64,000 nucleotides of DNA. Origin: Camelus ferus. Its lineage: Eukaryota. The notes beneath the pieces were generated by a model, which was not told the DNA's origin, did not search any database, and was given only the letters and a program-made list of their open reading frames with translations. Shown piece by piece: positions 5,486 to 45,320 of this stretch (position 1 is the stretch's first letter; the number at the start of each line of letters is the position of its first letter). The position numbers were made by a program, and so were the translations under genes. The stretch lies in assembly GCF_009834535.1 (NCBI RefSeq), contig NC_045705.1, positions 32,240,001 to 32,304,000 on the forward strand, given 5' to 3'.

Positions 5486-6406
5486 TTGAAAAATGTGAGT
5501 GAAGACACCATGTTTATATCGGTGGGCTTCACAGATGATTGTGAGCTGCAAGCTTTCCTATTTTTACTATTTCTAGCAATCTATCTTTTTACTCTGATAG
5601 GAAATTTGGGACTGGTTATGTTGGTTATTGTGGATTCTCGGCTCCACAACCCTATGTACTGTTTTCTGAGTGTGTTATCATTCTTGGATGCCTGCTATTC
5701 TTCAGTTATCACCCCCAAAATTTTGGTCAATTTCCTGTCAGAGAATAAAATCATTTCATATCTTGGATGCACAGCACGGAATTTTCTCTTTGTTACTTTT
5801 GGGACCACAGAATGCGTCCTCTTGGCCGCAATGGCATATGATCGCTACATAGCAATCTACAATCCCTTCCTGTATTCAGTGAGCATGGCGCACAGAGTCT
5901 ATGTGCCACTCATCACTGCTTCCTATGTTGGTGGCATCTTGCATGCTTCTGTGCACACAGTGGCCACATTTAGCCTGTCCTTCTGTGCGTCCAATCAAAT
6001 TACACACGTCTTTTGTGACATCCCTCCTCTCCTCGCTCTTTCTTGCTCTGACACTCGCACAAACCAGCTTCTACTCTTCTACTTCATGGGCTCTATTGAG
6101 ACAGTCACTATCCTGATTGTCCTGATCTCCTGTGGCTTCATTCTGCTGGCCATCCTGAGGATGCATTCTGCCGAAGGGAGAAGGAAAGCCTCTTCTATGT
6201 GTGCCTCTCACCTAACTGCAGTGCCCATTTTTCACAGTACAGTTCTCTTCATGTACATGAGACTGAGTTCCAACTACACCTTGGACCATGACGTGATAGT
6301 GTCTGTGTTTTACAGCATCATGATTCCCGTGCTGAATCCCATCATCTGCAGTCTGAGGAACAAAGATGTCAAAGAGGCCATGAAAAGAGTGTTTGGGAAA
6401 AATTGA
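5486..6406 (+). CDS. Olfactory receptor, OR5T subfamily, copy 1; open frame but probably non-functional
   Basis: Contains [27 protein letters not shown] and SLRNKDVK. The track start at 5486 is TTG, not ATG; the first in-frame ATG is 5510 and there is an in-frame TAG at 5420-5422. KAFSTC is changed to KASSMC and NPIIY to NPIIC. Subfamily assigned from resemblance to recalled human OR5T1/2/3. Confidence 0.85.
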
Positions 6407-13283: not shown

Positions 13284-14270
13284 ATGAAAACTAATATGCC
13301 AGGGTTGCCATCAGATTTAGATTTATTTAGGATTCCGATAAAAAATATGACTGAAGTCTCCATGTTTATACTGGTGGGCTTCACAGATGATTGTGAGCTG
13401 CAGGTTTTCCTATTTTTACTATTTCTAGCAATCTACCTTTTCACTCTGATAGGAAATTTGGGACTGGTTATATTGGTTATTGTGGATTCTCGGCTCCACA
13501 ACCCTATGTACTATTTTCTGAGTGTGTTATCGTTCTTGGATGCCTGCTATTCCTCAGTTGTCACCCCAAAAATGTTAGTCAGTTTCTTGTCAGAGGATAA
13601 AACCATTTCGTATCTTGGATGTGCAGCCCAGATGTTTCTCTTTGTTACTTTTGGGACCACAGAATGCTTCCTCTTGGCCGCAATGGCATATGATCGCTAC
13701 GTAGCAATCTACAACCCCCTCCTGTATTCAGTGCGCATGGCACCCAGAGTCTATGTGCCACTCATCACTGCTTCCTATGTTGGTGGCATCTTGCATGCTT
13801 CTGTGCACACAGTGGCCACATTTAGCCTGTCCTTCTGTGCGTCCAATCAAATTACACACGTCTTTTGTGACATCCCTCCTCTCCTCGCTCTTTCTTGCTC
13901 TGACACTCACTCAAACCAGCTTCTACTCTTCTACTTCATGGGCTCTATTGAGACAGTCACTATCCTGATTGTCCTGATCTCCTATGGCTTCATTCTGCTG
14001 GCCATCCTGAGGATGCATTCTGCCGAAGGGAGAAGGAAAGCCTTTTCTACGTGTGGCTCTCACCTAACTGGAGTGTCCATTTACCATGGAACCATCCTCT
14101 TCATGTACGTGAGACCGAATTCCAGCTACTCCTTGGACCATGACATGATAGCATCGACTTTTTATACCATTGTAATTCCCATGCTGAATCCCATCATTTA
14201 TAGTTTAAGGAACAAAGATGTCAAAGAGGTGATGAAGAGAGTGTTTGGAGGAAAAATCGTTTGTCACTAA
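13284..14270 (+). CDS. Olfactory receptor, OR5T subfamily (OR5T1/OR5T3-like), copy 2, intact
   Basis: 328-aa ORF with NMT sequon, [31 protein letters not shown] and [16 protein letters not shown]. The ATG at 13296 ([10 protein letters not shown]) matches the recalled OR5T1-type N-terminus and may be the true start. Confidence 0.93.
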
Positions 14271-15150: not shown

Positions 15151-15632
15151 TTTATATTAAAATGTACAGTGTTATTTTTCATCCCCATATAACTAAAACT
15201 GGATAGGCTCCCATACTTAACAATTGTAAGTAGCATTATAATTATATTTTACTGGCTTGAACAAACACACCTCATCCATAGCTAAACCATAGCTTGCATA
15301 ACCTCAATCCACACTCCATGTAGTTACCTGACTTCAGATCAAAGAACTCTGCTTCATCCCTGGATCAATACATTTGCAGCAAATTAATCTGTCTTTGGCT
15401 CAGTGACCACAGATCTGTGTCCAAATTCCTGGCGTCATTACCATGCCATTTGAGAGGGTGAATTTCTCCTGGACCTTCCAATTTTTTATTTTATCCAGAG
15501 CATGGACTTTAAATCCATTATTTATTGCCTCAGAAAACAGAGCCTAAGTATTAGCATTTATCAAGATTACATCTAAGGACCACTCATGTTCCATCGGCCA
15601 AAGGTTGGCTCAGCCAAGAATCAGGGTGGAAA

Positions 15633-15747: not shown

Positions 15748-16419
15748 GAGTCCCTGTGGGAAGGAATAACAAAAAATCATGGGTAAAAGAAGAAATAGTG
15801 TATTGGGGGCCATTATCATATAGGTGCAGCATGATTTTTTTTAATGATTCCATAATTTTCTATTGTATTTATGTACAATTTTTATTAAAATATTTCTCAA
15901 TATGTCCATTCATTTTTTCATTTTTTTGCTTAGAAAAATAGTGCTGCAATATACATTATATTACACATTAGTCATTTATATTTGTCCTTCCTATACTTAT
16001 TTCCTTAGGCATTTAGGCTTTTATTTCTATAAAGAAATCAAAAAATGACTCTGCAGCATCAAAGAATATTTTGGTTTTTGTAATAGCAGGTGTTCAGGTA
16101 GTGTCTAGAAAGGCATCCAAAAAAAGAGAAAAATGGAATAATTTCAATTATAGCACATACTGTATAAAACATCATCTTGTTAGTTATACATCTCAATTTA
16201 CTAGTTTACAGTGAGGTGGAAACTGATCTTTAAAAGCAAAACATTGCTAAATAAATGAACACAATTGACATAAATGTGAGGACATGAGGCTCTGCTAAAA
16301 AGGAAATCACATCATTAGCTTATTTAAAAATTGAGGACAATACAGAAAAGCAGATTTCAATTAAGTCTACATACAAATTAAATTCATAAAAGAATAATTT
16401 CTATGTTATTTCAAATGCC

Positions 16420-17355
16420 TCATAATGCTGATAATTTGGGAAGAAATTTCCTCATTGCCTTTCTGACATCTTTGTTCCGCAGACTATATATCATAGGATT
16501 GAACAATGGAGTCAAAACGGTGTAGAAAAGAGAGAGCAGTTTGTCTATTCCTACATACTGATCGGATTTAGGTTTTAAATAGGTGACAGTGGCTGATCCA
16601 TAGAACAAAACTACCACCGTGATGTGGGAAGAGCACGTGGAAAAGGCTTTGGTCCGCCCTGTGTTTGATGGCAGCTTCATGATGGTGGAGATAATTCTCA
16701 TATAGAAACTAAGTATCAACAAAAAGGGAACAGTGACAAGCAACACAGCAAATAGATAGACCACGATCTCATTCACAAAGATGTCGCCACAGGCCAGCTT
16801 CAGTAATGGGGGGATGTCACAGAAGAAGTGACTGATTTGATTAGAACCACAAAAGGACACAGAGAATATCTGCCATGTTTGTCCTATCTGGACTGGAGCT
16901 CCACTGATCCAGGAGGCCACCACCAGCTGGACACAGACCCTGTGGTTCATGACGAGGGGATAGTGCAGAGGGTTACAAATGGCCACGTAGCGGTCATAGG
17001 CCATCACAGCCAGCAGGAAACACTCCGTGGCTCCCAGCATAAGGAAGAAGCACATTTGTGTGGCACAGCTGAAAAAAGAAATACTTCCTTTCTGGGTCCA
17101 AAGGTCCATGAGCATCCTAGGAAGAGTGACAGACACATAACAGATCTCTAGGAAGGAAAGATTGCTGAGGAAAAAATACATGGGCGTCTGAAGAGCGACA
17201 TCTGCTCTTGTTACCAGAACTATGATGCCGTTCCCCAGCAGGATAGCCAAGTAGATGACTGAGAATACCCCAAAAAGCAGCCAGTGGAACCTGGGAATGT
17301 CAGAGAAGCCCAGGAGGACGAAGTCCATCCTTACAGTGAGATTTGTTTCCGTCAT
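16420..17355 (-). CDS. OR10AG1: Olfactory receptor 10AG1-like, copy A, intact (311 aa)
   Basis: NLT sequon, [31 protein letters not shown] and [11 protein letters not shown]. The segments LMDLWTQKG, CATQMCFFLMLG and LKLACGDIFVNE closely match recalled human OR10AG1. Confidence 0.93.
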   Translation of the reverse strand: MTETNLTVRMDFVLLGFSDIPRFHWLLFGVFSVIYLAILLGNGIIVLVTRADVALQTPMYFFLSNLSFLEICYVSVTLPRMLMDLWTQKGSISFFSCATQMCFFLMLGATECFLLAVMAYDRYVAICNPLHYPLVMNHRVCVQLVVASWISGAPVQIGQTWQIFSVSFCGSNQISHFFCDIPPLLKLACGDIFVNEIVVYLFAVLLVTVPFLLILSFYMRIISTIMKLPSNTGRTKAFSTCSSHITVVVLFYGSATVTYLKPKSDQYVGIDKLLSLFYTVLTPLFNPMIYSLRNKDVRKAMRKFLPKLSAL

Positions 17356-18694
17356 TTTCCAATTATTTTCTCTGTGTGGATTTACATTTCTTTGCTACAT
17401 TCTCCTCTTTTATAATTGGATTGGGACATGGGCTTTGGTCTTAACATGTTCTTAGTTACTTTCTGACACTTGTGTTCTGTGATTCTGGCAGATCTGTTGT
17501 GAAACCAGGAGCTATAAACTCATCTGCAGGAAAAAAAAAAAGCAACTCAGTAAATAAAATGCTTAAATGATTTATGCTAGATCTTTTAATTATACCAGTA
17601 AGATCTGTATGCCTACATATTTTGTTTAAATTATGGTGTGAGAAAAAAGAACGCAGATAAGCGATTTCTGCCATTCAAAACCTCAACTCAGCTACTAGTT
17701 GACCACTTCTGTGAATTTTTTGTCTAATCAAGCTATAATATAATATCTGACCTCTAACATCACACATAATGTTCCACTGACTATATACTTGTCTTTTCTG
17801 CCCTTGTCTTTAATGATTCATTATTCATGCTGTAAAGTATAGAGCACAAGGCTCTGCCCTAGTATGTTACTCCATAGATGTTTTTGAAAAAGTGGAACGG
17901 AAGTGAGAAAGATAATGAAACCTACAAGAATATAAAAGCCAAATCTTTTATTTTCAATGTCATAATGTTCTATCAATACCCATTCTAATTATTGAATTAA
18001 AATAAATCTTATTGCTTTAAAAAACACACATTTTTGATATTTAACTATTTTTAATTCTAAAAATATTTGGGCATGTTTCATTATTTTAAGCCAAAAGCAA
18101 ATGTTCCTAGGGAAAATAAAATCAATTTAAAAAAAAAAAGTTTAGCAAATGTAGTCAGATACTGTGTCCAAATCCTTCCCTGTTTGTGGTCCATTTGGGC
18201 CAAAAAAGTTGAACCAAATATTGTTCTGCAGTAAAATATAATTTGGAATAAATAAATGCTTCACATATTCCCCAGTAGAAGAAGTTTCCCTAATAAAAGG
18301 TGATTCCTTCTCACAGAAATACTTTTATTTAAAATGGCAACATTTACTTTATTATCAGTATAGCAAAATATGTTTAATTAATTTGAATGTAATAAACCAT
18401 TCTTTCATCATAGATTTCTTAATAGGTTATTTCTTAAAATGAAAAATGTTTTAACATTATTATTATTATTGTTAACATGGGGCAAATTAGAAATTTATAT
18501 ATTTCAAATGCTTCAAACACATTAACTTTTTAATTCAGAACATCAGAAATCTAGCTGAAATAATGCTATCTTAAATAATAAGTATCATTTCAACCCATAG
18601 TTATTTATGATTTTAGTTGTTCGAAATTATTAAATCTTGATCCTGAATTTTTTTAAAAAAAACTTGAATGAGAATATCAACATATTGATAGTTT

Positions 18695-18930
18695 ATATTT
18701 ACCTTTCTCAATTTTTCTGAAGATGATTCTTTTTCATTGATAAAATTTTTATATTTTAAAATGTTAAATTGCTAAGGATCTATAAGGTTTTTGATCAAGA
18801 ACTTAACCTGCTTTTAAAGAGCTTGGCTTTTTACAGAGGAAGTGATCACTTCTCCCCCATGGGAATATCTCTTTTCCCTCTATGTCTAAATTGCTAGTTA
18901 ATGCTCTTGGTTGCAATTAATTTGGAGTGT
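18695..18930 (-). promoter_or_regulatory. Putative promoter/first exon of OR10AG copy A
   Basis: O/E site CCCCATGGGA at 18855-18864 and homeodomain CAATTAATT near 18915. Minus-strand donor AAG|GTAAAT at 18702-18701; acceptor (T)11CCTGCAG with AG at 17525-17524. All are conserved in copy B. Confidence 0.55.
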
Positions 18931-19557
18931 TTTTGCAAACAGCTTTTCCATGGTGGACCAGAGTTTCCTGCAGGCTCTCTACAGAGTATAATTTCATGCA
19001 TTCTCCATTTCTTAAATACAGTTGGTGGGCTTGAATGTCTTAGAAGAACAAAACACTCTTAATAGTCCCACATTACCAGCAAAAAATGTTCAAATTCTTT
19101 ATCCAATGATATCTTATCTGTGTTATTTTATTTTCCATAATTCCTTTGAATAGACCTTTTCAGCAAATCATGTATTGTTAACATTATCTGGACATGTTCC
19201 ACTTATTTTTAAGGGGTACTAGGTTTAAGAGGTAGACTTTTGTGGTTGTGGGTTAAGTTTGTGAAGACAAAGGCAATTCTGTACTACTGAAACTAAAATT
19301 ACTTTATGCAAATTATGATTTTCTCTCAGACTCTGTGGGAATCCCTGAATAGACACACCCAGCTCATTAATAAACCCTGTAAACAAGGATCAAGAATAAT
19401 TATTATCTATAAAAGTTTGAAAATTAAATATCCTTCATTCTTATTGCAACATTTAATGATTTAGCATTTCTCAGTTTCAACCATCCATGCATTTCGTGGG
19501 GAAAACCACATTAAGCCTGACCTGGCATCTCCAGCCCAGCCCAGCTTCACATTTGAC

Positions 19558-20253
19558 TGTGTTTTGCTGTTGTTCCTGCAACAGCGTCATTTTCCACCCC
19601 CGGGCTTCTGTTCATCTTCACGTCGGGAGAATATTTCTTTCAACTTGTTCCTCAGCGTTTTTCCTTTATCGGGAGGTTATACTCCCTGTCACATCTTTCA
19701 TTGCACTTGTATTTGGAGATGTTCGGCACTTTCAAATGTCTGCCCTCTACCAGCTAGACCCCAAGTCCACTGGACCCCAAGACCACAACTGGATCCCAAG
19801 GCCCACTGCCAAGGAAGTAGAATTAAACTCTACATAAAAGAATAAAGACTGTGTTTTCCGACTCTAAATAATGTGCCCCTGGTGTCCCCACTGGTTTCAG
19901 AGCTAACACTTGTCGCAGAGCAGGCACCAGCAGGAACCCGAGTTTTAGCCAGTAAGTCTGGGAATTAAATCACGTGTTCTTCCTGTGGAAAGGACCCTTA
20001 AATGCCCAGTTTACACATAGTGGGAATTTGAGGACTAGGAGTTGACACAAGATCCTTATAGCCAGAAATGAGAAGATTCATTTTCTTTTTTTCATTTTAT
20101 TTCCTCCACGTAACACTCCATCAGTAGGAGAAATTCTTACAAGACTTCTTGCTGAAGCTGGAAAATGTTCTAATCATCAACTGAAGCCATGTTTGTTTAT
20201 GGCTGAGGCAGGGAAACAAGATAAACTATACATATTCATGCAACTGCCTGATA
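19558..20253 (+). mobile_element. ERV1-like LTR (19558-19908) plus a short 5' internal stub
   Basis: TG start, AATAAA at 19841-19846, ends ...GCTAACA at 19908, followed by degenerate PBS-like ttgtcgcagagcagg. Absent from unit B. Family not identified. Confidence 0.55.
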
Positions 20254-20399
20254 CTTTCTTCTCTCAACTTGCTGCTGTTTACACATCGATTCCTACTTTC
20301 AAGTTTCCTTTGAGAGTTGCCTGTGCTTCTGATTTGATTGTTGCTGAGTATTTGCTTTATATGCTACACAAACCTTCATGAAGACCTCAGTATCTCTTG

Positions 20400-22460
20400 T
20401 ATTCAGTTTTCTTATTCCTTCGTATTTCATGTTTTCTTCTTTCCATTTTTGTACATTCAAAAATATCATTAACAACCTGCCTTGTGTAAAATATGCAGCT
20501 CTTCATTTCTTTTACTTTCCGTCCCATTTTGTCAATGCGCGTCTGCGTATTTAAGGTGTAGCTTGATGTGGTAGCTGGGTTCTGCCTTTTGCTTTAATGT
20601 CTGCCTTTCACTTGGGCTGTTTAGTCCACGTGTATTTAGTGTTACTACGTTACCATTTTTTATTTGTTTGCATTTTTTCCTTCTTTCTTTCTTTTGGCTG
20701 TTCAGTTTCCTTCTGCCAATTTAAGGGTTAATTAAATTATTTGCGCTGTCTTTTTGTATATACCACTTTTTTAAAATTATCATTTCAGGGATTGCTTCAG
20801 GGTTAACAATTAAAAATGTGCATCTTTAATGTATCAAAGTTTACCTACGGTTAAAATTGTTCCATTTTAATCTTCATCCTTTACCACGGATGCTTCCACT
20901 TTTCCACGTCCCCCTTCATCCTTCATGTCTCACACCACCCACGTCACATCTCACTCCACAAATGTCATAATCCTAGAATAACTCCTTTTCCTCAGATGAT
21001 GTGCTCTGTGTTACTGATGTCATACATTTTGCTTGTATCTATATTATGAACCCCAATTTGCAATGCCATTATTTTAGCTTTAAATAGTCAGTTGTCTCAC
21101 TGTGATGTAACAGAGTTTATTTGGTTCATTCTAATGGGGCTCATTATGGTATGTATACCCATGTCTTCCATCCAATTTGAAAAACTGTAAAAAAAATTTG
21201 AAAAATTGTCAGCTACTGTAATTATTTTCCTACACTTGTCCTTCAGTTATGCCTATTTTAGACAATGTGATATAAATCCACCTGTTATTGAGGCTCTAAT
21301 TTTTTAAAATAATTTTAAAAAAATACTCTTTCTAGGTTGTATTATTTATAGTAATTTGAATTTAAATTCACTGACATTTCTTTGCACATGTCCAAACGAC
21401 ATCAAATCCCATCAGCCTTTCATTTCACTTGCCCTTCACTTACATTTCACTTCCTTTCATTGTACGCTTCACTGTAGAATTTTAATTAATTTTTTTTTGA
21501 GAGTTGTTATATATCTATGGGAACAACCTACTCAAATTGTATGTAGTTACATTTTATTTCAAGTGTTTGGCGATAATTTTAAGAGATTATTAAAAGTCTC
21601 TGTTAAATCTGTCATCTGAGACATCTTGCAGTCATTTTTAACTGATTACTTTTTTCTAGACTATGGTTTAGTTTTCCTAAGTTTTTCATATCCTGTATTT
21701 TTTCCTTCATATTTTAAATAGCTTATGATATGTAGTAGAGTCTTTGGAATCTCATATCTTCCTATGAAGAGTGCTAATTTTTATTCTAACAAACCATTAT
21801 TATGGGATGGCCATTTTGACTTGTAAAATCTGGGTTTTATGTTTTGTTAGTGAAAAGTTGTCCAGAGATCAAGGTGTTTCCCACATCGAAATAACTTGGG
21901 GAATTCAACATCCAAATTCTATCTTCCCTACAGATATCACTGAGACTTAGGTTGGAACTTTTTCTAGAGTGAATCTTGAGAGAGCTAATGACCTGACTTT
22001 AGGAAATAAGTCTTACTCTACAGCCCCAGCACTTCCTGTGTCTCAGATGCTGCTTAAGATATTATTCCAGTGTGGAGAGTGCTGGCTGGGATGCATCCCC
22101 AATGTCTCTGAGCTGTGCTTTATTCCTAGTATCTTTATTCTTTCCTCAATTACATATCAGTCATTTTCTTAGAAGCATTCTATAGCCTCCTCTAGCGTAT
22201 GCATATCCCATCATTTTTCCAGAGACTCTCAAAAAAATTTCATTCAGGTCTATCTGTCCCTTAGTCATTATATAGCTCCCTCATCTTCTCTGCCCTGGAA
22301 CAAATCCTAGCCTCTTTAGGTGTCTTAAATGCTGATCTCTGCCTCCTCAGCTCAGTGGGCATCTCTGCTCTTCATTTGTTCCAGTTATCTGTACCTTGAT
22401 CAGGAAATTGTCTCCAGGCATAAAGCCAGCATGGTCAGGGGACTAACATTGTCAATTTCC
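20400..22460 (-). mobile_element. Ancient L1M fragment, shared with unit B
   Basis: Degraded antisense L1M-type text, homologous to 42780-44855. Confidence 0.6.
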
Positions 22461-28070: not shown

Positions 28071-29027
28071 TTAACACAACAATCGCAGACGTGAAGGGAT
28101 CCTTGTCCTAGGAACTGCATTCCATAGAGCCTTCTTCACTTCCTTATTCCTGAGGCTGTAGATCAGAGGGTTCAACATGGGGATGACCACCGTGTAGAAC
28201 ACGGAAGCCACTTTGTCTTGACTCAGGGAGTAGCTGGAACTAGGTCTCAGGTAAGTGTAGGTGGAGGTGGAATAGAACAGAATGATGGCTGTCAGGTGAG
28301 AGGCACACGTGGAGAAGGCTTTGCACCTGCCCTCCCCGGAATGCATCCGAAAGATGGAGAAGAGAATGCAGCCGTAGGAGGCGAGGATCACCAGCAGAGT
28401 CCCGACCATATTCACACCAGCAAAAGTGGACAAAATGACTTCATACAGGTGAGTGTCAGAACACGAGAGCTTAAACAGCGGTGGGCTGTCACAGAAGAAG
28501 TGATGGATGACCCTGGACCTGCAGAATGGCAAGCTGCTTACATAACCTGTGTGAACCATGGAGTTCAACAGCCCTGCTGTGAAAGACCCAGCTGCCATTT
28601 TTAGGCAGACTGTGGTGGACATGATCAAGGAGTAACGCAGAGGGTTGCAGATGGCCACATACCGGTCATAGGCCATTAATCCAAAAGTGATGCATTCAGT
28701 TGTGGCAAAGGCTATGAAGAAGTACATCTGCAGGAAGCAGCCAGCAAAGGAGATGGTTTTCTTCTCCGACAATAAATCTGCCAGCATCTTTGGAGTGATG
28801 GTGGATGAATAACAAACGTCCATAAAAGACAGGTGAGCCAGGAGGAAATACATGGGAGTGTGAAGTCGGGACTCCATCCTGATTAATAAGATCATCCCAA
28901 CATTCCCCAGAACTGTAAGTGTGTAAATCACAGCAAAAAGCAGAAAGAGGAGGATCTGTAGCTCCGGCGTGTCTGCTAATCCCAACAGGAGGAACTCAGT
29001 CAGCAAAGTGTAATTTTTTCTGGCCAT
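28071..29027 (-). CDS. OR5F1: Olfactory receptor 5F1-like, copy A, intact (318 aa, 4-aa read-through tail)
   Basis: [46 protein letters not shown] and [25 protein letters not shown] are near-identical to recalled human OR5F1. Confidence 0.95.
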
Positions 29028-32732: not shown

Positions 32733-33181
32733 TGTGATGGTTAATTTCGTAAGTCAACTTGCATGGGCCTTGGAGATCCCAGATATGGTCAGTCCTGATT
32801 CTGTGTGATTCTGGGATGATGGTTTTGATGAGAATAACATTCATATTAGGAAACTTTGTATGAAACAGGTTTCCCTCTATAATGTGGGTGAGCCATTTGC
32901 AATAAGCTTAAGGCCTGAATAGAACAGAAGAAACAGCCTCTCCTGTGCTGGAGAGAACTCCTGGGGGTACTGCCTTCAGATACCACTGCAACTTTGGCAG
33001 CAAAGTGCTTTAGACCCTAACTGGAACATTGGCTCCCCTGGGTCTCACATCTTCAAGCTCACCCTATAAATGTCAGATTTGCCAGCCTCTGTAATCCTGT
33101 GGGACAATTATTTTAATAAATCTATCCATATGTATGTACATATCTTATTGGTTCTATCTTTCTGGAGAAGCTGACTAGTGA
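32733..33181 (+). mobile_element. MLT2 LTR (5' LTR of an ERVL provirus)
   Basis: Starts tgtgatggttaatt..gtcaactt, contains AATAAA, and ends ttggttctatctttctggagaagctgact. Confidence 0.9.
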
Positions 33182-36100
33182 GGACTTTACTACTGAGAAT
33201 AGCCCTAGGGAATCAGAATTGTAAAGATGCATTTTCTAAACGGGCTCTGGCATTTCTGCAATTAATGGTCAGAGATGATTGAGCATTAGTGTCATTTTAA
33301 AACACTGATAACTATTTCCAGTAGTAAAGAAAACAGTGATAGTCTGTGGTGTGGTCCGACAATCAAGACACACAAATAGCACCATGGACACTCTACTAAA
33401 GTGCTGACAGGAGCAAGGGTCTGGGTGGCTATGTGGATGAAGCCTTCACACATTTTTATCTAGCTAACAAGTCTAAGGAGGTTGACTTGTTCCTAATGTC
33501 TTTGGGCAAATTAAGGAAAGAAAAGGAGAAGCTCAGGGATTCAAATTCCAAACTCAAGTGCCACATACATGACTTCAGAGCTTCTGCGCTTGCCTTCATC
33601 TCCTGTAGCTGCAGAGGTGAGATGGCTGGAAGCACAACCCAGCATCTCCTGGCCATGTCGGGGTATCTGCTGTCAGAGTGAGGGCACTGATGGGGAAAAA
33701 GAAAGGATCCTGAAGTCCATCTGAGAAGTCCCTGATGAGGCTAGGGACATCGTCCTGTAAATTCTGAGAAGACAACAAGGCCAAGAGAAGCAGTGCTACC
33801 ACTCTGGTGTCCTTGGAGAGAAGCTGCAAATGATGCAAGTAATGCTGCACTGCCTGAGGGAAGTGTTATGGTCTCTTCTGAGGCAGGCACTGTGCAGCTC
33901 CGTGCTGACTCTTATCCGCTCCCACCCCAGCCACAGGCCCTTAGAGGTGAGATCCACATGGAGTGGCTCATGAAGTGTGACCCATGTGGAGGAAGACTAC
34001 ACTCCAAAAGAAAGAACTGAGTACTCTACACAGTTAGTAATATGGAGAACATGTGTGGATCTTAAAGGTGGGGGATAATGGTGGAAGGAATATGATGATA
34101 GATCACGCTGAACTCATTGCTGAGGGCCTACTAAGCAGAGATTCTCATTCCATGTTGAGGATCAGGGAGTTAAAAAAAGACTCTAACATTTTGATTGGTT
34201 AACTTGGCTGAAACATAGAGCAAATGGTGGCCAATGGTGAACAAATTGGTAATGGCCAACCTGCCTTGGTTTAATGTAGGGAAAGTGAGGTAAAGTCTTA
34301 GGGAGATTGGAATGCTAGAGTGGATTTGTCATTTAAGATCTATTCGCTCACACTGGGAGTGTGCAAAAGACACACCTTTTACCAGCATGGCAAGAAATGC
34401 ATTCACGAAGTGAGTCCAAAATTCTTGAAGATATCCAGGATTGGTCTTCTCTCTAGGCCAAGTCTTACCATGGGAACTGTAGACATTGAATTCAGAAATT
34501 CACAAGCAATAATATGAATTGTCCAACTGGCAGAACTCACCTTTCAAAATTAAGGTGATCATAGTTACTGTAATGGGCGGTAGAGTCAGAATAGTCTGAT
34601 TCACACAGACGTACGGAATTGGCTAGTTAATCAGGGTTTTCCTAGATGTGAAAAAGAAAGCTCATCAAATTTTCACTTGATATGTATAAGCAGAAAAGAT
34701 TCAGATCAAGGGAAACAAAGTCTAACTAAAATCATTAAAGTAGAAAGTGATGACTCAGTTCCCAGACTTGAGCCAATTTACAGATCCAGGACCCTTTCAG
34801 TGAGCGGTAGGTTGGGTCCCTTTAAGGAAGGTCAGTATAATACCCAAAATGTGTCATTTTAATCTTTCTCCCAGCCCTCCCCAAAGGGACTTATGGACTT
34901 TTACCAGTATAACTACAGTGGAGAAAAGAAAAGAATCAGAATTTTCCAGAATTGCTGGACACTGAGACCCAAAACATCACTGTGGCCATCTGGTCAGAGT
35001 GGAGCCTTGCTGATATCAAGTGATGAATAGTGTTTTAGCCCAGATCCATCTCAGAGTGAGTCCAGTGTAGTCCTTGAAAGCATCCTGTGTTTATTTTCCC
35101 AGCTCCAGAATGCAAAATTGCAGTAGATTTATTTATCAGTTGGCATTGATTCCCTGAGCTGTGCAGTGAGGAGTTTCATGGTGGGAAAGTCCAAATAGAA
35201 GCCACGGGAACTGACCATCCCTAGGAAAATGGTGTATCATAAGCCGTACCACATTCCTGGAGGGGTTACAGAGGTGAGTGCCACCTGCAAGAATTTAGAA
35301 TACGCCGGAGTGGTAACTCACCACATTCCCGTTCAGCTCTCCTATTTGACTTGTGCAGAAGGATGTGGAAGAGCACCAGTGATTACTGTCAGCTTAACCA
35401 AGTGGCGACGTCAGCTGCAGCTGGTGAACCAGATGACCACATACCCTGGAACCTGGTGTGGAACTACTGATTTTTTTTTTCTTCATGCTTGTCCATAAGG
35501 TCCCCCAGAAACAGTTTCCTTTCCTTCCGCAAGACCAGCAGCACACCTTCACTCTCTCCCCTCAGGGCTGTATAAACTCCCAAGCTCTATGTCGTAATGT
35601 AGTTTGCAGAGCTCTCCATCAGTTTCCCTTCCTAAAAAGGTACCGCTGGTCCATTACACTAACGGCATTATGCTGATTGGCCCAGTGACCAAGAAGTAGC
35701 AACTACTCTAGTTTATCAGTAAAGATTTTCCTAGCACAGAGTAGGAAATAAATCCACAAATCTGACTAAATTTCAGGGACTTTCTATCTCTGGGAAATTT
35801 CTAGTCATCCAGTGATGGGGGAAATGTCAAGATATTTCTTTAAAAGTGAAGAATGAAAACAACTATATGTATGTATATGTGTGACGGAATGATTATGCTG
35901 TACACCAGAAATTGACACATTGTAAACTGACTATACTTCAATTAAAAAAAAAAGTTTTTAAAGTGAAGGATGAGTTGCTGCATCTGGTGTCTCTTACAAC
36001 AAAGAAAGAAGCATGATGCCTAAAAGGCCTTTTTGAATTTTGGAGGCAGCAGATTCCTTATCTGAGTGTGTTCCTATGACCCATTTACCAAAGGACCCCA

Positions 36101-36422
36101 AAAGCTTCTGGGTTTGAGTGGAGCCCAGAGCAAGAGAAGGCCCTGCATCAGATCCAGGCTGCTGAGGAAGCTGCCCTCCACTTGGTCCATACATTCTAGT
36201 GGACCCAGCAGTGCCCAAAGTGTCTGTGACAGAGAGAGATGCTGTTAGAAGCCTCTGGCAAACCCTAAAGGTGATATATAGATCAAGCCTGTAGGATTTT
36301 GGATCAAGGCCCTGTCATCCTCTGCAGATAGATTTTTTTGGGTGAGAACTCTTTGCCTGCCACTGGATCTTAATAGAAACCAAACTCTTAACTGTAAGCC
36401 AGCAAGTTACCATTACGAATCA
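33182..36422 (+). mobile_element. ERVL internal region (decayed gag-pro-pol), 3'-truncated
   Basis: Frame fragments YHIPGGVTEVSATCKNLEYAGVV, QQHTFTLSPQGCINSQALC and LVHYTNGIMLIG are degenerate ERVL RT motifs, with many stops and frameshifts. Confidence 0.9.
35857..35959 (+). mobile_element. ~100-bp L1 3' tail nested in ERVL pol
   Basis: tgctgtacaccagaaattgacacattgtaaactgactatacttcaatt + A10; TSD AAAGTGAAG(A/G)ATGA at 35843-35856 and 35960-35973. Confidence 0.9.
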
Positions 36423-38237
36423 GGTGCTATATGATGAAAATGGTAAAATGTTTGCTTTAAAGACACAGATGTATTTAAATGAAATGAAAATAGAAGTGTA
36501 CTATTTAATCTTTGCCTGTATATTTATCATGTTCCGTGCCTTTTCTTTCTTTCTGAGAACTGCATTTTCCTCTGATATCATGTTACTACTGGTTAAAGGA
36601 TTTGATTGGCATTTCTGGTAAATCAAGTCTGATAGTAATAGATTCTCTTTATTTTCTTCCACTGAAATTTCATGTTTCAATTTCAATCATTTTTTAAAGT
36701 ATTTAAATAGCTTTTTTAAAGTTTAATTGAAGCATAACCAAAAGCCCATATCAGCAGTTTATAATTTGCTACATTTTGCTGTGGCTACATCCACAATCAA
36801 GATAAGGGATTTATCTATCGCACCTTGAATTTTCTCATGCTCCCTTTTTTCATTCCAGTAACACACAGACACAAACCAAATTGAAAATTAATCCCTTTGT
36901 GGTCAGAATATATTCTGCATTTGCTTCAAGTACTGGGACTTGATTTTTAAGTAGTACAACTTTTGATCTATCTTGGCGAATATATTCCTTTAAAAAATGC
37001 GTATGCTATTGTGTGGGATATTGCAGATAAAAACACTTAGGCCATGCATTTTCAGCCACAGTTTCAATATCTGATACTTTTGTGCTTTTCCCTTTGGGTT
37101 ATTACCAGTGATCTTTTAAATTTTGATCTGCAGGACTCAACACAGACTTTTATTTCAAAACAGAGAATTTCACTTTGTGAAAGAAATTTTTAGATATGCA
37201 AGGAATTAACAAACCTACCAGGTGTGGGCATTCCAAAATGACAAATGAAAAGTGCATTCAAATATGGAAGGGGATTGACAGATTTTAAAAAGTCTATGAA
37301 TAACACATGCTTTAAAGAATTAGTAGAGCATATTGAATAATAGTTTCCAAACTCTTAAATTAGCATATTGTAAGTATGTTTAAATTTGGTTTCACATTAT
37401 GTGATTTGTGTATCATCTGTGGCTTCTTTCTTTGAGCTCTCTCATTGTCCAGGAGTCTAGTCTGGGCTTTTTGACATAGTGATAAAAAGATTCACACTGT
37501 TAGAGAGGACAAGTCTTAATGTCTAAGTACTGTTCATGTTGACTAATGTTCCATTCGCCAGAAGTAATAATAGAGCTAAATCAAGTCAGGGTGGGAAGGG
37601 AAGATCAAAAAGCACGTATACAAGGAGAAATGAATTATCGGGGATCATTACCGTTTAGGTGAAACATGGGCTTTTTAATGACTCCATAAATTTGTTATAA
37701 CTATGCACAATGTTCATTAAAATATTTCTCAATATGAGCATTCATTTTTCCTTTTTTTGCTTAGAAAAATAGTGCTGCAATATGCATTATATTACATATT
37801 AATTATTTATGTTAGTCCCTTTTAAACTTATATCTATATACATTTAAGCTTTTATTTCTGTGAGGGAATCACTTAGTAATGTTTCTGTAGCATCTAAGGA
37901 TATTTTGTTTCTTCAATAGAGAATGTTAAAGTAGTGTCTAGAAAGGCACCCAAAAAAAGAGAACAGAATAATTTTAATTATAGTGCAAACTACATATTAC
38001 ATCACGTTGTTTAGTTACACATCTCTATTTACTACTTCACGGTGAGAAGGAAACCTATCTTTAAAAGTACAACACTGTTAGAAATAGAACATAATTACCA
38101 TAAATCTGGGAACAGAATGGTATATTAAAAGGAAATTACACCATTACATTATTAAAAATAAAGAAAAAAATGAAAGGTAGATTTCAATTAAGTCTACATA
38201 CAAATTGAATCCATAAAATAATAATTTCTATGTTATT

Positions 38238-39182
38238 TCAAATGCCTCGTAATGCTGATAATTTGGGAAGAAATTTCCTCATTGCCTTTCTGACATCTTT
38301 GTTCCGCAGACTATATATCATAGGATTGAACAATGGAGTCAAAACGGTGTAGAAAAGAGAGAGCAGTTTGTCTATTCCTACATACTGATCGGATTTAGGT
38401 TTTAAATAGGTGACAGTGCCTGATCCATAGAACAAAACTACCACCGTGATGTGGGAAGAGCACGTGGAAAAGGCTTTGGTCCGCCCTGTGTTTGATGGCA
38501 GCTTCATGATGGTGGAGATAATTCTCATATAGAAACTAAGTATCAACAAAAAGGGAACAGTGACAAGCAACACAGCAAATAGATAGACCACCATCTCATT
38601 CACAAAGATGTCCCCACAGGCCAGCTTCAGTAATGGGGGGATGTCACAGAAGAAGTGACTGATTTGATTAGAACCACAAAAGGACACAGAGAATATCTGC
38701 CATGTTTGTCCTATCTGGACTGGAGCTCCACTGATCCAGGAGGCCACCACCAGCTGGACACAGACCCTGTGGTTCATGACGAGGGGATAGTGCAGAGGGT
38801 TACAAATGGCCACGTAGCGGTCATAGGCCATCACAGCCAGCAGGAAACACTCCGTGGCTCCCAGCATAAGGAAGAAGCACATTTGTGTGGCACAGCTGAA
38901 AAAAGAAATACTTCCTTTCTGGGTCCAAAGGTCCATGAGCATCCTAGGAAGAGTGACAGACACATAACAGATCTCTAGGAAGGAAAGATTGCTGAGGAAA
39001 AAATACATGGGCGTCTGAAGAGCGACATCTGCTCTTGTTACCAGAACTATGATGCCGTTCCCCAGCATGATAGCCAAGTAGATGACTGAGAATACCCCAA
39101 AAAGCAGCCAGTGGAACCTGGGAATGTCAGAGAAGCCCAGGAGGACGAAGTCCATCCTTACAGTGAGATTTGTTTCCGTCAT
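38238..39182 (-). CDS. OR10AG1: Olfactory receptor 10AG1-like, copy B, intact (314 aa)
   Basis: Same motifs as 16420-17355. Only 5 nucleotide differences from copy A at a constant offset of 21827. Confidence 0.93.
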   Translation of the reverse strand: MTETNLTVRMDFVLLGFSDIPRFHWLLFGVFSVIYLAIMLGNGIIVLVTRADVALQTPMYFFLSNLSFLEICYVSVTLPRMLMDLWTQKGSISFFSCATQMCFFLMLGATECFLLAVMAYDRYVAICNPLHYPLVMNHRVCVQLVVASWISGAPVQIGQTWQIFSVSFCGSNQISHFFCDIPPLLKLACGDIFVNEMVVYLFAVLLVTVPFLLILSFYMRIISTIMKLPSNTGRTKAFSTCSSHITVVVLFYGSGTVTYLKPKSDQYVGIDKLLSLFYTVLTPLFNPMIYSLRNKDVRKAMRKFLPKLSALRGI

Positions 39183-40166
39183 TTTCCAATTATTTTCTCT
39201 GTGTGGATTTACATTTCTTTGCTACATTCTCCTCTTTTATAATTGGATTGGGACATGGGCTTTGGTCTTAACATGTTCTTAGTTACTTTCTGACACTTGT
39301 GTTCTGTGATTCTGGCAGATTTGATGTGAAACCAGGAGTTATAAATGCATCTGTAGGGGAAAAAAAAAAGGTTTATAATTGTAGATCTGCATTCTAATTA
39401 TACCAATAAGAATCCTATGCTTAGACATGTTTTTTTTTTAATTATGGTGTGAAAAGGGAGGATGCAGATTAGCTATTTTTTTCGAGTCAAAACCTCAGCT
39501 TAATTATTAGTTGTCTAACAACCATAAATTTTTTTTCCAGTCAGTCCAGTTTGTATATAATATCTGATCTATAACATTTAGCAACATGTTCCTCCAACTA
39601 TTTACATGTCTTTTCTACCTTTGCTATTATATCCAATAATTCATTCTATAAAGAACAGAGCGCAAGGCTCTGCCCTAATATGTTACTACATAGATGCTTC
39701 TGAATTAAATTAAAAATAGAAATTACTGTTAAATTGGTTATTTTCCAAGAAGTGAGAAAGGATGATTAAAACTACAAAAATATAAATGCCAAATCTTTTA
39801 TTTTAAACATCATAATGTGCCAGCAATACTCATCCTAATTTTTTGAATTACAATAGATCTTATTGCTTAAGAGACACAAGTTTTTGGTATTCAGCTATTT
39901 TTAATCCCCCAAATATTAGATATTTAAAAAAATTTAAACCCAAACAAAATGTTCCTAGAGAAAAATAAAATCAATTTTAAAACATTAGCAAATGTAGTGA
40001 TCTTGTGCCAACTCCTTCCCTGTTTGCGGTCTGTTAGACAACATAAACAATAATAGAACACGGGCCCCCAAAGTTGAAACAAATATTCTTTTGCAGGAAA
40101 TTGTATTTTGTATAAAAATAAATGCTTAATATATCCCCCAACAGAAGAATATTCACTAATACAAGT

Positions 40167-40805
40167 TGTTGCAGGTAATTAGGTTCTTGTCTCCTTGCAG
40201 GAAGAATTCAGAGACAGGACGTGGCGGTTAAGAAAGAAAACAGAGGATTTATTAGGGGCTGGATAGTACATTCTCAAGGGGAGAGCGGGGCAGGCTCAGG
40301 TGGGCAGCTGCCTTAGTTTCTTTGGCAAGTTGGTTACATTGAGTGTAAAAATGAATGGGCAGAATATTCATCGGGGAGGGAAGGACTTGTGGTTGTAGTC
40401 CCTGATTTTCATCCCAACTCCACTTTCCTACAGGAAGGAGAAATTTTTGTCCTTATTTAGTCTGGTTTGGAAGTGTCATGGTGTTGGTGCGTGATGGCTA
40501 CTTCTAAACTGCAAGGCTAATTTTATTGAAACGAGGACATAATGAGCAAAAGGTTACATGGGGACACTGGAGATTCCTGCCTTTTCCCACCTTTCTTTGT
40601 CAGCCTCCAGGACACGTGTCACCCCAAAATGTGTGACTGCTTATTAACCCAGAGGTTCCCGCTTTTCTTTGTCTGCCCAGGCACCCCTGTTGTTTACATG
40701 ATGTATGGTTTCTTGTATTTGGCCCACGCCCTTTTTGCCTAATTCCTGAAATTTGGTCTGCATCCCCTTTCTCTGCTCATATCTAGCTATCTACCTGCTC
40801 TAACA
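40167..40805 (-). mobile_element. Solo ERV1-like LTR in the putative 5'-UTR intron of OR10AG copy B
   Basis: TGTT...AACA termini, approximate 4-bp TSD (aagt/aggt), minus-strand AATAAA at 40253-40248. The empty site is seen in unit A near 18290. Confidence 0.85.
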
Positions 40806-41189
40806 AGGTGATTCCTTGTCATAGAAATTATTTTACCTATAATGGCAACATTTAGTTTATTAACAGTATAGCAAAATATGTTTAATTAATTTGAATGAAA
40901 TTATCACTTTTTGACTATAGTTTTCTTAATAGATTATTTCTTAAAATGAATAGATTTTACAATATTATATAGTTAAGAGACAAATTAGAAATTTGTATAC
41001 TTCAAATGCTTCACGCACATAATTTAACTTATAACTTCAGAAAGTCAGAAGCCTACCTTACATAATGCTATCCTAAATAATAAATATCATTTCTACCCAC
41101 ATACACTCATGATTTTAGTTGTTTGATATTATTTATTGACTCTTGATCATGAAATTGGTAACATTATCTTGAATTAAAATAGCATATCA

Positions 41190-41425
41190 ACATATTTACC
41201 TTTTTCAGTTTTGCTGAAGTTGCTTCCTTCTCATTGATAAATGTCTATATTTTAAAATGTTACATTGTTTACAATCCATAGATGTTTAAACAAGAACGTA
41301 ACTTGCTTTTAAAGAGCAAGGCTCCTTACAGAGGAAATAGTCCCTTCCTCCCCCAGGGAATGCCCCTTTTCCCTCTTTACATCTAAATTGCTAGTTAAAC
41401 GCTCTTGTTTGCAATTAATTTGGTG
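41190..41425 (-). promoter_or_regulatory. Putative promoter/first exon of OR10AG copy B
   Basis: O/E site TCCCCCAGGGAA at 41349-41360 and CAATTAATT near 41412. Donor at 41199-41198; acceptor AG at 39352-39351. Confidence 0.55.
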
Positions 41426-42043
41426 TCTCTGCAAACAAATCTTTCATGGTAGGCCAGACTTCCCTGCAGGCTCTCCACAGAATACAATTTCATGCACTCT
41501 CCATTTGTTAAATACTGTCAGAAGACATGGATGTCCTAGAAGAACAAGCACTCTTAATGGTTCAATATTACCTGCAGGAAACTGTTCATATTCTTTATCA
41601 ATTGATTTCTTACTTGTGTTATTTTATTTTCTATAATTCCTCTGAATAGAACTTACAGCAAATCATGCTGTGTTAACATCATCTGGCCATGTTTTACTTG
41701 TTTACTTACCTTTAAGGGGTAATAATTTTAAGAGGCAGACATTTGTTGGTTAAAATTTGTGAACACAAAGGCAATTCTGTATTATAGAAACTAAGATTAC
41801 TTTATTCAAATTATGATTTTCTCAGACACTATGTGAATCCCTGAATAGACTCACTCATCTTATTAATAAACCCTGTAAACAAGAATTAAGAACAACTATT
41901 ATCAATAAAACTTTTTTCTAACTAAAAACTCCTCTTTCTCATTGCAACATTTAGTAATTTAACATTTCTCAGTTTCAACCCTCTTCTGTGCATTTCATGG
42001 GGAGAACACTTCAAGCATGAGTCTAACATCTCCAGTCCCATAC

Positions 42044-42650
42044 TGAGACAGGAAGGAAGGGGGCAGGGCACAGCCATTCAAGGAATGACTCTGCAATTAA
42101 CACCAAAATGGTGGAAGATTCAACTCCCAGTGCCTTGAGGCTCAAGATGGCGAGAGATTTGACTTCTAGTAGACCTTGAGCTTCATTATTCGCTCATTGT
42201 AATATATTAGCATGCTAAATGATATGCCTACAGGCACCATGACAGTTCTAAGGCTAACCATTGAAGGTCTAAAAGTGAGCAGTGGCCCAGTTCCTGGAAT
42301 CCCAGCCCCTTCCCCAAAAGTAATTGGAATAATCCTCCCACTTGTTAGCATAAGAAGCTACTGAGTCCATAAGAACTAACAAACCTTATGGCATTCTCCC
42401 TTCTGAGGGAGACAGACTGCACTCTGTCTATGGAGCGCATATCTACTGAGCACCCAACCCTCACACGTTATGGCCTTTCTCTTGCCTTCTGAAACAGCCT
42501 ACACTCTATTGAGTATGTCTCTCTCTAAATAAATCTACCTTTACTCAACTGTGATTCACTCTTGAATTCTTTCCCGTGCGGAGTCAAGGACCCACACTGG
42601 GCAGGGCACATCCCAGGGACTCAACAGAGACCTGGGACATGGTCATCCTC
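42044..42650 (+). mobile_element. Solo MER41-like ERV1 LTR
   Basis: tgagacaggaagg start, caaaatggtggaagat, AATAAA at 42528-42533, ttctttcccgtgcggagtcaaggaccc end region. Absent from unit A. The 3' boundary is approximate and the family call is from recall. Confidence 0.7.
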
Positions 42651-42779
42651 ACTCCACATTTATTTTCCTCTATCATTACTGCTACTTATATGTATATTCC
42701 CGCTTTCAAGTTTCCTTTCACAGTTCTCTTTGCTTCTAATTTTATTTTTGATAGATACATGCTTTATACTCTACACATA

Positions 42780-44855: not shown

Positions 44856-45320
44856 ATTTCACCATTTCACATGTCTATACATACATGGCTAATGTATTTC
44901 TCAGTCATTACTTAGTTACTTCATTTTTGTCGTTATCTCTATTACCTCACCTACGTGGACTATTTACCTTTTTGAGGATACAAAATACAGACTACTGTTC
45001 ATATTGCTTTTCCCATTTGTTTGCCTGCTAGGTGTTTTTTCCTTTTTTCTTTTTCTTTTTTTTTTTGATGGAGCCTCAGCCAACTATGGATTGTTTTACA
45101 GCAGTTATAATTTTAAAAGATTATAATTCACATTGGTCTATAAGTACCTGTGTAACATTATCACAAAAGTCTAAAATATTTCCTACTGTCCACTTTAAGT
45201 ATAACCATGCAGACCCCCCCTGCTTGTTGAAGCCTATATCAAGTATTTTAACAGCCTGATGATCTCTGTCCAAAATAACAACACTTATCATCTGAACATT
45301 CTTTGTCATGTAATATTGTG

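What the first reader, a model, noticed from the sequence alone, without database searches (positions are those of the whole stretch)
16393..17493. OR10AG pair: 1.1-kb near-identical block inside otherwise ancient duplicates
Seen: 16393-17493 vs 38220-39320 (offset 21827) differ at only 5 of 1101 bases: 3 amino-acid changes, 1 synonymous change and 1 stop change. The block includes 138 bp of 100% identical 5' sequence that ends just short of the conserved splice acceptor. Just outside, identity drops to roughly 70-85% with many indels (by eye). Known: neutral UTR and synonymous sites cannot stay identical through purifying selection. Inference: very recent ectopic gene conversion between genes 22 kb apart homogenises the receptor while leaving two diverged promoters, so one receptor effectively has two regulatory units. 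That may raise its choice frequency or broaden its zonal expression.
Basis: partly seen in the sequence, partly recalled or inferred. Interest (0 to 1): 0.7.

Follow-up and report, generated by a model that had tools for sequence, protein, structure and literature searches.

The report
Camel smell-receptor twins kept alike
Two neighbouring camel smell-receptor genes that duplicated tens of millions of years ago keep copying their coding part onto each other, so the proteins stay almost identical while the surrounding DNA has drifted apart; this is a clean example of a process already known in this gene family.

Summary
Window 16393-17493 and 38220-39320 differ at 5 of 1101 bases (3 amino-acid changes, 1 synonymous, 1 stop change). 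The homologous flanks are only 72-84% identical and carry indels.

The block is real, not an assembly artefact:
- It is present in four other assemblies (dromedary, C. bactrianus, the older C. ferus assembly, alpaca).
- Contigs from three independent sequencing runs cross the flank/block junction.
- In one run the block has 2.3 times the flank depth.

The cause is non-allelic gene conversion, but not one recent event. Flank trees group the genes by position (A with A, B with B). The block tree groups them by species, and the AU test rejects an A clade on the block (p = 1e-4). Seven substitutions are shared by both camel copies only, six by both alpaca copies only, and one by both copies of the Bactrian lineage only.

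The camel A gene now carries B-lineage sequence. The dromedary keeps A-type patches and has the stop-codon allele at the opposite position. The duplication is about as old as the camel-pig split.

The process is known for olfactory receptor genes, so this is a new, well-resolved member of a known kind.

The parts
16393..17493 (-). Homogenised block, copy A: the last 138 nt of the 5' UTR, the whole coding sequence and 27 nt after the stop
   Evidence: 5/1101 differences from copy B. The identity steps are sharp on both sides.
38220..39320 (-). Homogenised block, copy B
   Evidence: Same comparison. The same block lies in B-type flanks in dromedary, C. ferus, C. bactrianus and alpaca.
16420..17355 (-). 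Gene A: OR10AG1-like olfactory receptor, 311 aa, intact
   Evidence: ORF list. Pfam 7tm_4, E = 1.6e-55. Nearest named relatives are OR10AG1-like proteins of Camelus.
38238..39182 (-). Gene B: OR10AG1-like olfactory receptor, 314 aa, intact
   Evidence: ORF list. Pfam 7tm_4, E = 1.6e-54. It is 99% identical to gene A.
15756..16392 (-). 3' flank of unit A, homologous to 37591-38219 but about 21% diverged
17494..22459 (-). 5' flank of unit A (rest of the exon start, intron, candidate promoter, upstream DNA). It is homologous to 39321-44860 at 72-84% identity, with indels and a 0.6-kb insertion in B
18810..18901 (-). Candidate promoter of gene A: a homeodomain-like site (18885-18901), an O/E-like site (18852-18865) and a TATA-like box (18810-18822). 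A consensus splice donor follows at 18702-18701
   Evidence: The motifs sit at aligned positions in A, B, dromedary, alpaca, warthog and cattle. This is consensus-level evidence only, with no transcript data.
41305..41398 (-). Candidate promoter of gene B: the same three motifs (41382-41398, 41347-41360, 41305-41317). The donor is at 41199-41198
   Evidence: This region is 78% identical between A and B.
17321..17493 (-). 5' sub-block that is homogenised in camels only
   Evidence: Alpaca A versus alpaca B differ at 19/171 sites here. Window A versus alpaca B differ at 3/173, and window A versus alpaca A at 18/171. Dromedary A keeps A-type states at 17419-17393.

Best explanation
Two tandem, same-strand OR10AG1-like olfactory receptor genes lie 21.8 kb apart in a Bactrian-type camel. 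They come from a duplication about as old as the camel-pig split. Their coding exon has evolved in concert through repeated non-allelic (interlocus) gene conversion: a break in one copy is repaired from the other copy. Tracts stop where the flanks, about 22% diverged and full of indels, no longer support heteroduplex formation, so only the coding sequence plus a few dozen to about 140 flanking bases is exchanged.

Shown here:
- The process ran in the camelid stem and then independently in the camel and alpaca lineages.
- In camels the A gene was overwritten by B-lineage sequence, including a camel-specific 173-base extension at the 5' end.
- Exchange went both ways in the dromedary and continued after the dromedary-Bactrian split.
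- Four of the five remaining differences show the same two letters at the A or B position of other camel assemblies.

Inferred:
- The molecular route (repair of a break, limited by homology).
- That both genes are expressed from their own, still similar, promoters.
For: Identity step: 5/1101 differences against 72-84% in the flanks.

Neutral sites are homogenised. dS between A and B is 0.0047 in the window, 0.019 in dromedary and 0.048 in alpaca, against dS 0.48 between camel and warthog.

Pairwise distances:
- Flanks: A versus B 20-24% in every species; camel-alpaca orthologues 2.0-3.8%.
- Block: A versus B 0.5% (window), 1.0% (dromedary), 3.2% (alpaca); camel versus alpaca 2.5-4.5%.

Trees: in the flanks the A clade and B clade have 100/100 support and lie 0.27 substitutions per site apart. 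In the block, alpaca A+B separate from all camel copies with 93/99 support. The AU test rejects an A clade on the block (p = 0.0001) and an alpaca clade on the flanks (p = 0.006).

Sites polarised with warthog and cattle:
- 55 derived states are shared by all camelid copies.
- 7 are derived in both camel paralogs only, 6 in both alpaca paralogs only, and 1 in both paralogs of the Bactrian/ferus lineage only (16518).
- 8 B-lineage states are present in all camel copies, against 0 A-lineage states.
- Dromedary A keeps A-type states at 17419, 17412, 17398 and 16637. Dromedary B carries A-type states at 17402-17393.
- The stop-codon allele at 16422 sits at position B in the window and at position A in the dromedary.

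The block is not an artefact. It is present in five assemblies of four taxa. Contigs of three independent runs cross the A flank/block junction with no differences. In run X9 the block contig has depth 182.7 against 80.4 for the flank contig.

The kind of event is described for olfactory receptor genes: conversion of entire coding regions homogenises paralogs (review PMC1995454, citing Sharon et al. 1999; read). The title of Nagawa et al. 2002 on the MOR28 cluster says the same (seen).
Against: No direct observation of a conversion event (pedigree or sperm typing) is possible here.

Assignment of single variants to position A or B inside a 1.1-kb near-identical block could be disturbed by short-read polishing in any one assembly. 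The allele 'swap' at 16422 and the shared polymorphisms therefore rest on assemblies whose methods I could not check.

Only the A-side 3' junction was checked with reads.

The age of the duplication relative to the pig split is unresolved (trichotomy, support 41/0). Only 10 kb on each side was seen in warthog and cattle, so a second copy there is not excluded.
Confidence: 0.9

Rival explanations
1. Assembly or polishing artefact: one copy's coding sequence was wrongly written over the other in this assembly, and the real genes are as diverged as their flanks.
For: Near-identical 1.1-kb paralogous blocks are hard for short reads. The 2012 C. ferus scaffold has a 378-base foreign insert inside gene A. 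Individual variants are placed differently in different assemblies.
Against: The block sits in A-type and B-type flanks in the dromedary, C. bactrianus, C. ferus and alpaca assemblies. The alpaca copies differ from the camel copies by 2.5-4.5%, so they are not copies of camel data. Contigs from three separate runs cross the junction without a difference, and block depth is 2.3 times flank depth in X9.
Confidence: 0.02
2. A single very recent conversion event in otherwise unconverted ancient duplicates.
For: Only 5 differences separate A and B in the window, and dS is 0.0047. The 5' 173 bases were indeed converted only in camels.
Against: Alpaca A and B differ by only 1.7% in the core, 16393-17320. 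There are 55 derived states shared by all camelid copies, and separate sets of substitutions shared by both paralogs within camels and within alpaca. The dromedary copies form a different mosaic from the window copies.
Confidence: 0.05
3. Transcript-templated replacement: a cDNA or mRNA of one gene served as the repair template. This would explain why the tract lies wholly inside the coding exon.
For: Both block edges fall inside the predicted exon. The 5' edge is 30 nt after the predicted acceptor and the 3' edge 27 nt after the stop. The neighbouring OR pair shows a tract about as long as its coding sequence.
Against: The tract follows the coding sequence, not the exon. It does not run on into the rest of the 3' UTR, which a transcript template would allow. 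The edges differ between lineages: the 5' edge is near 17320 in alpaca and at 17493 in camels, and the 3' edge lies between 16380 and 16349 in alpaca and at 16392 in camels. That pattern fits homology-limited DNA exchange. No evidence exists of germ-line expression.
Confidence: 0.02
4. Purifying selection alone keeps two old genes alike.
For: The genes are under constraint: dN/dS is about 0.18 against warthog.
Against: Synonymous and untranslated sites are identical too. dS is 0.0047 against 0.48 for camel-warthog, and 138 UTR bases are identical. The trees conflict.
Confidence: 0.01

Closest known systems
Coding-region gene conversion between clustered olfactory receptor paralogs (human/primate chromosome 17 OR cluster, Sharon et al. 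1999; mouse MOR28 cluster, Nagawa et al. 2002)
   Same: Tandem OR paralogs in one cluster. Whole or nearly whole coding regions are replaced by a paralog's sequence while the non-coding DNA stays diverged. The result is homogenisation (review PMC1995454; the Nagawa title was seen).
   Different: Here the history is resolved across four camelid assemblies with outgroups. Conversion persisted in two lineages for longer than the camel-alpaca split. It has a shown direction (B into A in camels), patches in both directions in the dromedary, and a second pair in the same duplicated segment doing the same. I could not read the two primary papers, so the comparison rests on the review and on titles.
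Concerted evolution of duplicated genes by frequent non-allelic gene conversion (theory and human data, e.g. PMC3924837; Harpak et al. 2017 as cited in PMC10463633)
   Same: Low divergence between duplicates is kept up for a long time. Polymorphisms are shared between paralogs. There is a hint of GC bias: 10 weak-to-strong against 2 strong-to-weak changes among the substitutions that spread to both copies.
   Different: This is one locus with small numbers, so the GC bias is only suggestive (one-sided binomial p about 0.02 by my own arithmetic).
OR10AG subfamily (human OR10AG1, cattle OR10AG75)
   Same: The best named relatives are OR10AG1-like proteins. The cattle relative, at 81% identity, is named OR10AG75.
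   Different: The window also holds a third, older OR10AG1-like gene (46795-47751) that is only 62% identical to A and B and is not part of the exchange.

Membership tests
Mammalian class II olfactory receptor, OR10AG subfamily | Seven-transmembrane olfactory receptor domain | tested here: met
   Pfam 7tm_4 with E = 1.6e-55 (A) and 1.6e-54 (B), covering residues 31-305.
Mammalian class II olfactory receptor, OR10AG subfamily | Uninterrupted coding exon of about 310 codons with the usual OR motifs (MAYDRY, KAFSTC, NPxxY) | tested here: met
   ORFs of 311 and 314 aa. [18 protein letters not shown] and [11 protein letters not shown] can be read in both translations. The ORF is intact in all eight camelid copies.
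Mammalian class II olfactory receptor, OR10AG subfamily | Closest named relatives belong to OR10AG | tested here: met
   Hits are named OR10AG1-like in Camelus, Vicugna, Sus, Equus and others. Cattle OR10AG75 is 81% identical.
Interlocus gene conversion / concerted evolution | In-register tract of high identity bounded by homologous but diverged flanks | tested here: met
   5/1101 differences with no indel, against 72-84% identity with indels outside.
Interlocus gene conversion / concerted evolution | Homogenisation includes neutral sites | tested here: met
   dS is 0.0047 and 138 UTR bases are identical. Camel-warthog dS is 0.48.
Interlocus gene conversion / concerted evolution | Tract and flanks give conflicting trees across species | tested here: met
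   Flanks group by position (100/100) and the block groups by species (93/99). The AU tests give p = 0.0001 and p = 0.006.
Interlocus gene conversion / concerted evolution | Lineage-specific derived substitutions present on both paralogs | tested here: met
   7 are camel-only, 6 alpaca-only and 1 Bactrian-lineage-only.
Interlocus gene conversion / concerted evolution | GC-biased outcome | tested here: inconclusive
   10 weak-to-strong, 2 strong-to-weak and 1 other change. Block GC is 44% against 28-30% in the flanks, but coding sequence is GC-richer anyway.
Interlocus gene conversion / concerted evolution | Direct observation of transfer (pedigree, sperm typing, phased population data) | not testable with these tools
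Assembly collapse or polishing artefact | Seen in one assembly only and not supported by independent reads | tested here: not met
   The block is present in five assemblies. Junction contigs come from three runs, and depth is 2.3-fold in the block.

The most novel reading that the evidence does not exclude
The homogenisation is kept by selection rather than being a neutral by-product. Camelids would gain from having one receptor specificity encoded at two separately chosen loci, giving roughly double the number of sensory neurons or a wider zone. That would explain why both genes have stayed intact and alike for longer than the camel-alpaca split, and why the neighbouring OR5F-like pair in the same duplicated segment behaves the same way. 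A related idea, given only in the title of Nagawa et al. 2002, is that conversion helps maintain the olfactory map.
Probability: 0.12. Interest if true: 0.55.

Novelty: new member of a known kind. Interest (0 to 1): 0.3.

Why it matters
The locus is a compact natural record of how gene conversion acts on chemoreceptor genes. It gives tract edges to the base, a direction, a rough order of events over three splits (pig, alpaca, dromedary), and variants still moving between copies.

In practice it warns that trees built from OR coding sequences will date this duplication as recent and camel-specific, when the flanks show it is as old as the base of the even-toed ungulates. It also warns that short-read variant calls in these genes will mix the two loci.

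If both promoters are active, the pair offers a way to ask how much the number of loci, rather than the protein, sets the share of neurons that choose a receptor. That remains untested.

Tried and rejected
I did not resend those letters or the identical B letters, so the 5' junction and the B side were not checked with reads.
- Run X8 gave no laid contigs.
- Look-ups of the older alpaca protein P0004 and of the window's 328-aa neighbour gene found nothing, so C. bactrianus position A was not obtained.
- The old C. ferus position-A locus (L005) was left out of the trees and site counts because a 378-base foreign insert lies inside the block.
- The cattle flanks align poorly (about 36% differences), so cattle was used only to polarise block sites.
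- A scan for O/E-like sites gave counts no higher than chance (my estimate is about 2 expected in 5.6 kb). Only the site kept at the same aligned position in all species was retained, and only as a candidate.
- Rejected readings: selection alone, a single recent event, a transcript template, and an artefact. The reasons are under rival explanations.
- Literature searches found reviews and citations but not the full text of Sharon 1999 or Nagawa 2002.

Full report
**Observation.** Window 16393-17493 and 38220-39320 align without gaps at an offset of 21827 and differ at 5 of 1101 positions: 16422, 16592, 16765, 16786 and 17241. Both stretches hold an intact ORF on the minus strand. Gene A is 16420-17355 (311 aa) and gene B is 38238-39182 (314 aa). 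Both match the Pfam olfactory receptor domain 7tm_4, with E = 1.6e-55 and 1.6e-54. The five differences are L39M, a synonymous change in codon 190, I197M, A255G and a stop-to-Arg change that adds three residues to B. The 138 bases before the ATG are identical. The predicted splice acceptor (AG at 17525-17524 in A, 39352-39351 in B) lies 30 nt beyond the block edge.

A self-comparison and a gapped alignment show that the two genes sit in homologous units, about 15756-22459 and 37591-44860. Outside the block these units are 72-84% identical, with many indels and a 0.6-kb insertion in B. Five or fewer differences in 1101 sites has a probability near 1e-105 at the flank divergence and near 1e-63 at the divergence this block shows between camel and warthog.

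**Whose genome, and is the block real?** The proteins are OR10AG1-like receptors of Camelus. The window is 99.9-100% identical to a Camelus ferus scaffold. I fetched these loci:
- position A and position B from a dromedary assembly;
- position B from a C. bactrianus assembly;
- both positions from the 2012 C. ferus assembly;
- both positions from an alpaca assembly.

In every one the block lies between A-type or B-type flanks. The only disturbed copy is position A of the 2012 short-read assembly, where a 378-base foreign insert replaces part of the block. I left that copy out.

Logan contigs of three independent runs cross from the A 3' flank into the block with no difference. In run X9 the contig inside the block has word depth 182.7, against 80.4 for the flank contig, as expected if the block's words occur twice per genome. 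An assembly artefact is very unlikely.

**What the comparison across species shows.** Distances are.

| Region | A vs B | Camel vs alpaca, same position | Dromedary vs window, same position |
|---|---|---|---|
| Flanks | 20-24% in every species | 2.0-3.8% | 0.2-0.7% |
| Block | 0.5% (window), 1.0% (dromedary), 3.2% (alpaca) | 2.5-4.5% (any pairing) | 0.9-1.6% |

The flank tree puts all A copies and all B copies in two clades, each with 100/100 support, 0.27 substitutions per site apart. The block tree separates the two alpaca copies from all camel copies (93/99). An AU test rejects an A clade on the block (p = 0.0001) and an alpaca clade on the flanks (p = 0.006).

**Age of the duplication and the expected divergence.** I fetched a warthog relative on chromosome 2 and the cattle gene OR10AG75 on chromosome 15, each with 10 kb on either side. 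Their flanks resemble A and B flanks about equally. In the flank tree, A, B and warthog form an unresolved three-way split: A-B 21.4%, A-warthog 22.6%, B-warthog 24.7%, support 41/0. The duplication is therefore about as old as the camel-pig divergence. I cannot say whether pigs and cattle have a second copy beyond the 10 kb seen.

Over that same span the block differs by 14-16% between camel and warthog or cattle, with dS 0.48 and dN/dS about 0.18. Without conversion, A and B should be about that far apart. Observed dS is 0.0047 in the window, 0.019 in dromedary and 0.048 in alpaca.

**History read from single sites.** States were polarised with warthog and cattle.
- 55 derived states are shared by all eight camelid copies, so A and B were already evolving together in the camelid stem.
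- Seven derived states are on both paralogs of all camels but on neither alpaca copy: 17320, 17246, 17238, 17230, 16867, 16786 and 16418.
- Six are on both alpaca copies only: 17245, 17090, 16585, 16584, 16582 and 16423.
- One (16518) is on both paralogs of the Bactrian/ferus lineage only.
- 17374 is derived in both window copies and in C. ferus B, but not in C. bactrianus B.

Conversion therefore went on independently in both lineages after their split and continued after the dromedary-Bactrian split.

Eight states that arose on the B lineage (present in alpaca B, absent from alpaca A) are on all camel copies, and no A-lineage state is. The camel A gene was thus overwritten from B. Dromedary A still keeps A-type states at 17419, 17412, 17398 and 16637. 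Dromedary B carries A-type states at 17402-17393, so exchange ran both ways there.

The tract edges differ between lineages. In the 5' 173 bases (17321-17493), alpaca A and B differ at 19 of 171 sites, while window A differs from alpaca B at 3 sites and from alpaca A at 18. At the 3' end the alpaca edge lies between 16380 and 16349, and the camel edge at 16392.

Of the five differences in the window:
- 17241 is private to window B;
- the other four (16786, 16765, 16592, 16422) show both states at A and B positions of other camel assemblies;
- the stop-codon allele sits at B in the window and at A in the dromedary.

In run X9 the block contig runs through 16592 without a break, which suggests that this difference is absent in that animal. 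Because short-read polishing could misplace single variants inside such a block, I treat the sharing of individual variants as likely but not proven.

**Mechanism.**

Shown: repeated, in-register replacement limited to the coding sequence and a few dozen to 170 adjoining bases. It occurred in two lineages, in both directions, and includes neutral sites.

Inferred from established knowledge of homologous repair: a break in one copy is repaired from the paralog 21.8 kb away on the same or the sister chromatid or the homologue. Heteroduplex extension stops where about 22% divergence and indels begin. Once the coding part is alike it remains the only good substrate, so the process sustains itself.

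Among the substitutions that spread to both copies within a lineage, 10 are weak-to-strong and 2 strong-to-weak. That hints at GC-biased repair, with a one-sided binomial p of about 0.02 by my own arithmetic. The block has 44% GC against 28-30% in the flanks.

A transcript template is unlikely, because the tract follows the coding sequence rather than the exon and its edges move between lineages.

**Regulation.** About 1.5 kb upstream of each ATG there is a set of motifs typical of OR promoters: a homeodomain-like site, an O/E-like site and a TATA-like box. About 110 bases further on there is a consensus splice donor.

| Element | Gene A | Gene B |
|---|---|---|
| Motif set | 18810-18901 | 41305-41398 |
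| Splice donor | 18702-18701 | 41199-41198 |

All of these lie at aligned positions in A, B, dromedary, alpaca, warthog and cattle. The region is 78% identical between A and B. This is consensus-level evidence without transcripts. It suggests that both genes kept the ancestral promoter layout.

[quoted passage not shown] 1999 (PMC1995454). The title of Nagawa et al. 2002 proposes a role for conversion in the mouse MOR28 cluster (seen). The locus meets every tested defining feature of interlocus conversion with concerted evolution. It is a new and well-resolved member of a known kind.

Other notes of this scan list similar coding-limited tracts in OR52J, OR10D1, OR6C1 and TAAR7 pairs of the same genome (unchecked). 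The scan had thus already noted this process on other DNA of this genome, and it seems common in camel chemoreceptor genes.

**Verdict.** Gene conversion is supported, but as long-running concerted evolution with recent episodes rather than a single recent event. The regulatory consequence is untested. Interest is modest.

Noticed in passing
window 28071-29027 (-) and 58850-59794 (-); block about 28080-29020 versus 58847-59790: The neighbouring OR5F-like pair in the same duplicated segment also has a block limited to the coding sequence. It is about 98% identical (dS 0.036, proteins 97.5% identical) inside flanks that are about 75% identical. This looks like the same process with an older last event.
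   Followed up: partly
window 5486-6406 (+) versus 13284-14270 (+): A third OR pair (about 80% DNA identity, 84% protein identity) shows no homogenised block. The first copy has no ATG and carries NPIIC in place of the NPxxY motif, so it is probably a pseudogene.
   Followed up: no
window 18810-18901 and 41305-41398 (-); donors at 18702-18701 and 41199-41198: A candidate OR promoter (homeodomain-like, O/E-like and TATA-like motifs) and a first-exon donor are conserved at aligned positions in both paralogs and in dromedary, alpaca, warthog and cattle.
   Followed up: partly
L005:10745-11124 (C. ferus GCA_000311805.2, scaffold KE537625.1): The 2012 short-read assembly has a 378-base foreign insert in place of the equivalent of window 16583-16454 inside gene A, which explains the truncated 268-aa protein model. 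It shows how near-identical paralogous blocks break short-read assemblies.
   Followed up: partly
block 16423-17355, camel versus alpaca: Synonymous divergence between camel and alpaca in the block (dS 0.07-0.09) is two to three times the divergence of the adjoining non-coding flanks (2.4-3.4%). Possible causes are more CpG in the GC-richer block, biased conversion, or the sorting of old A/B differences.
   Followed up: no
window 46795-47751 (-): A third OR10AG1-like gene lies between the two units. It is only 62% identical to A and B, has close orthologues in ruminants, carnivores and others (83-87% identity), and takes no part in the exchange.
   Followed up: partly
L008 (warthog chromosome 2) against window 33148-36413 and 15160-15576: DNA downstream of the warthog gene matches sequence that in the camel is split between the region downstream of B and the region downstream of A. 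This fits one ancestral unit that was duplicated and then lost different parts.
   Followed up: no
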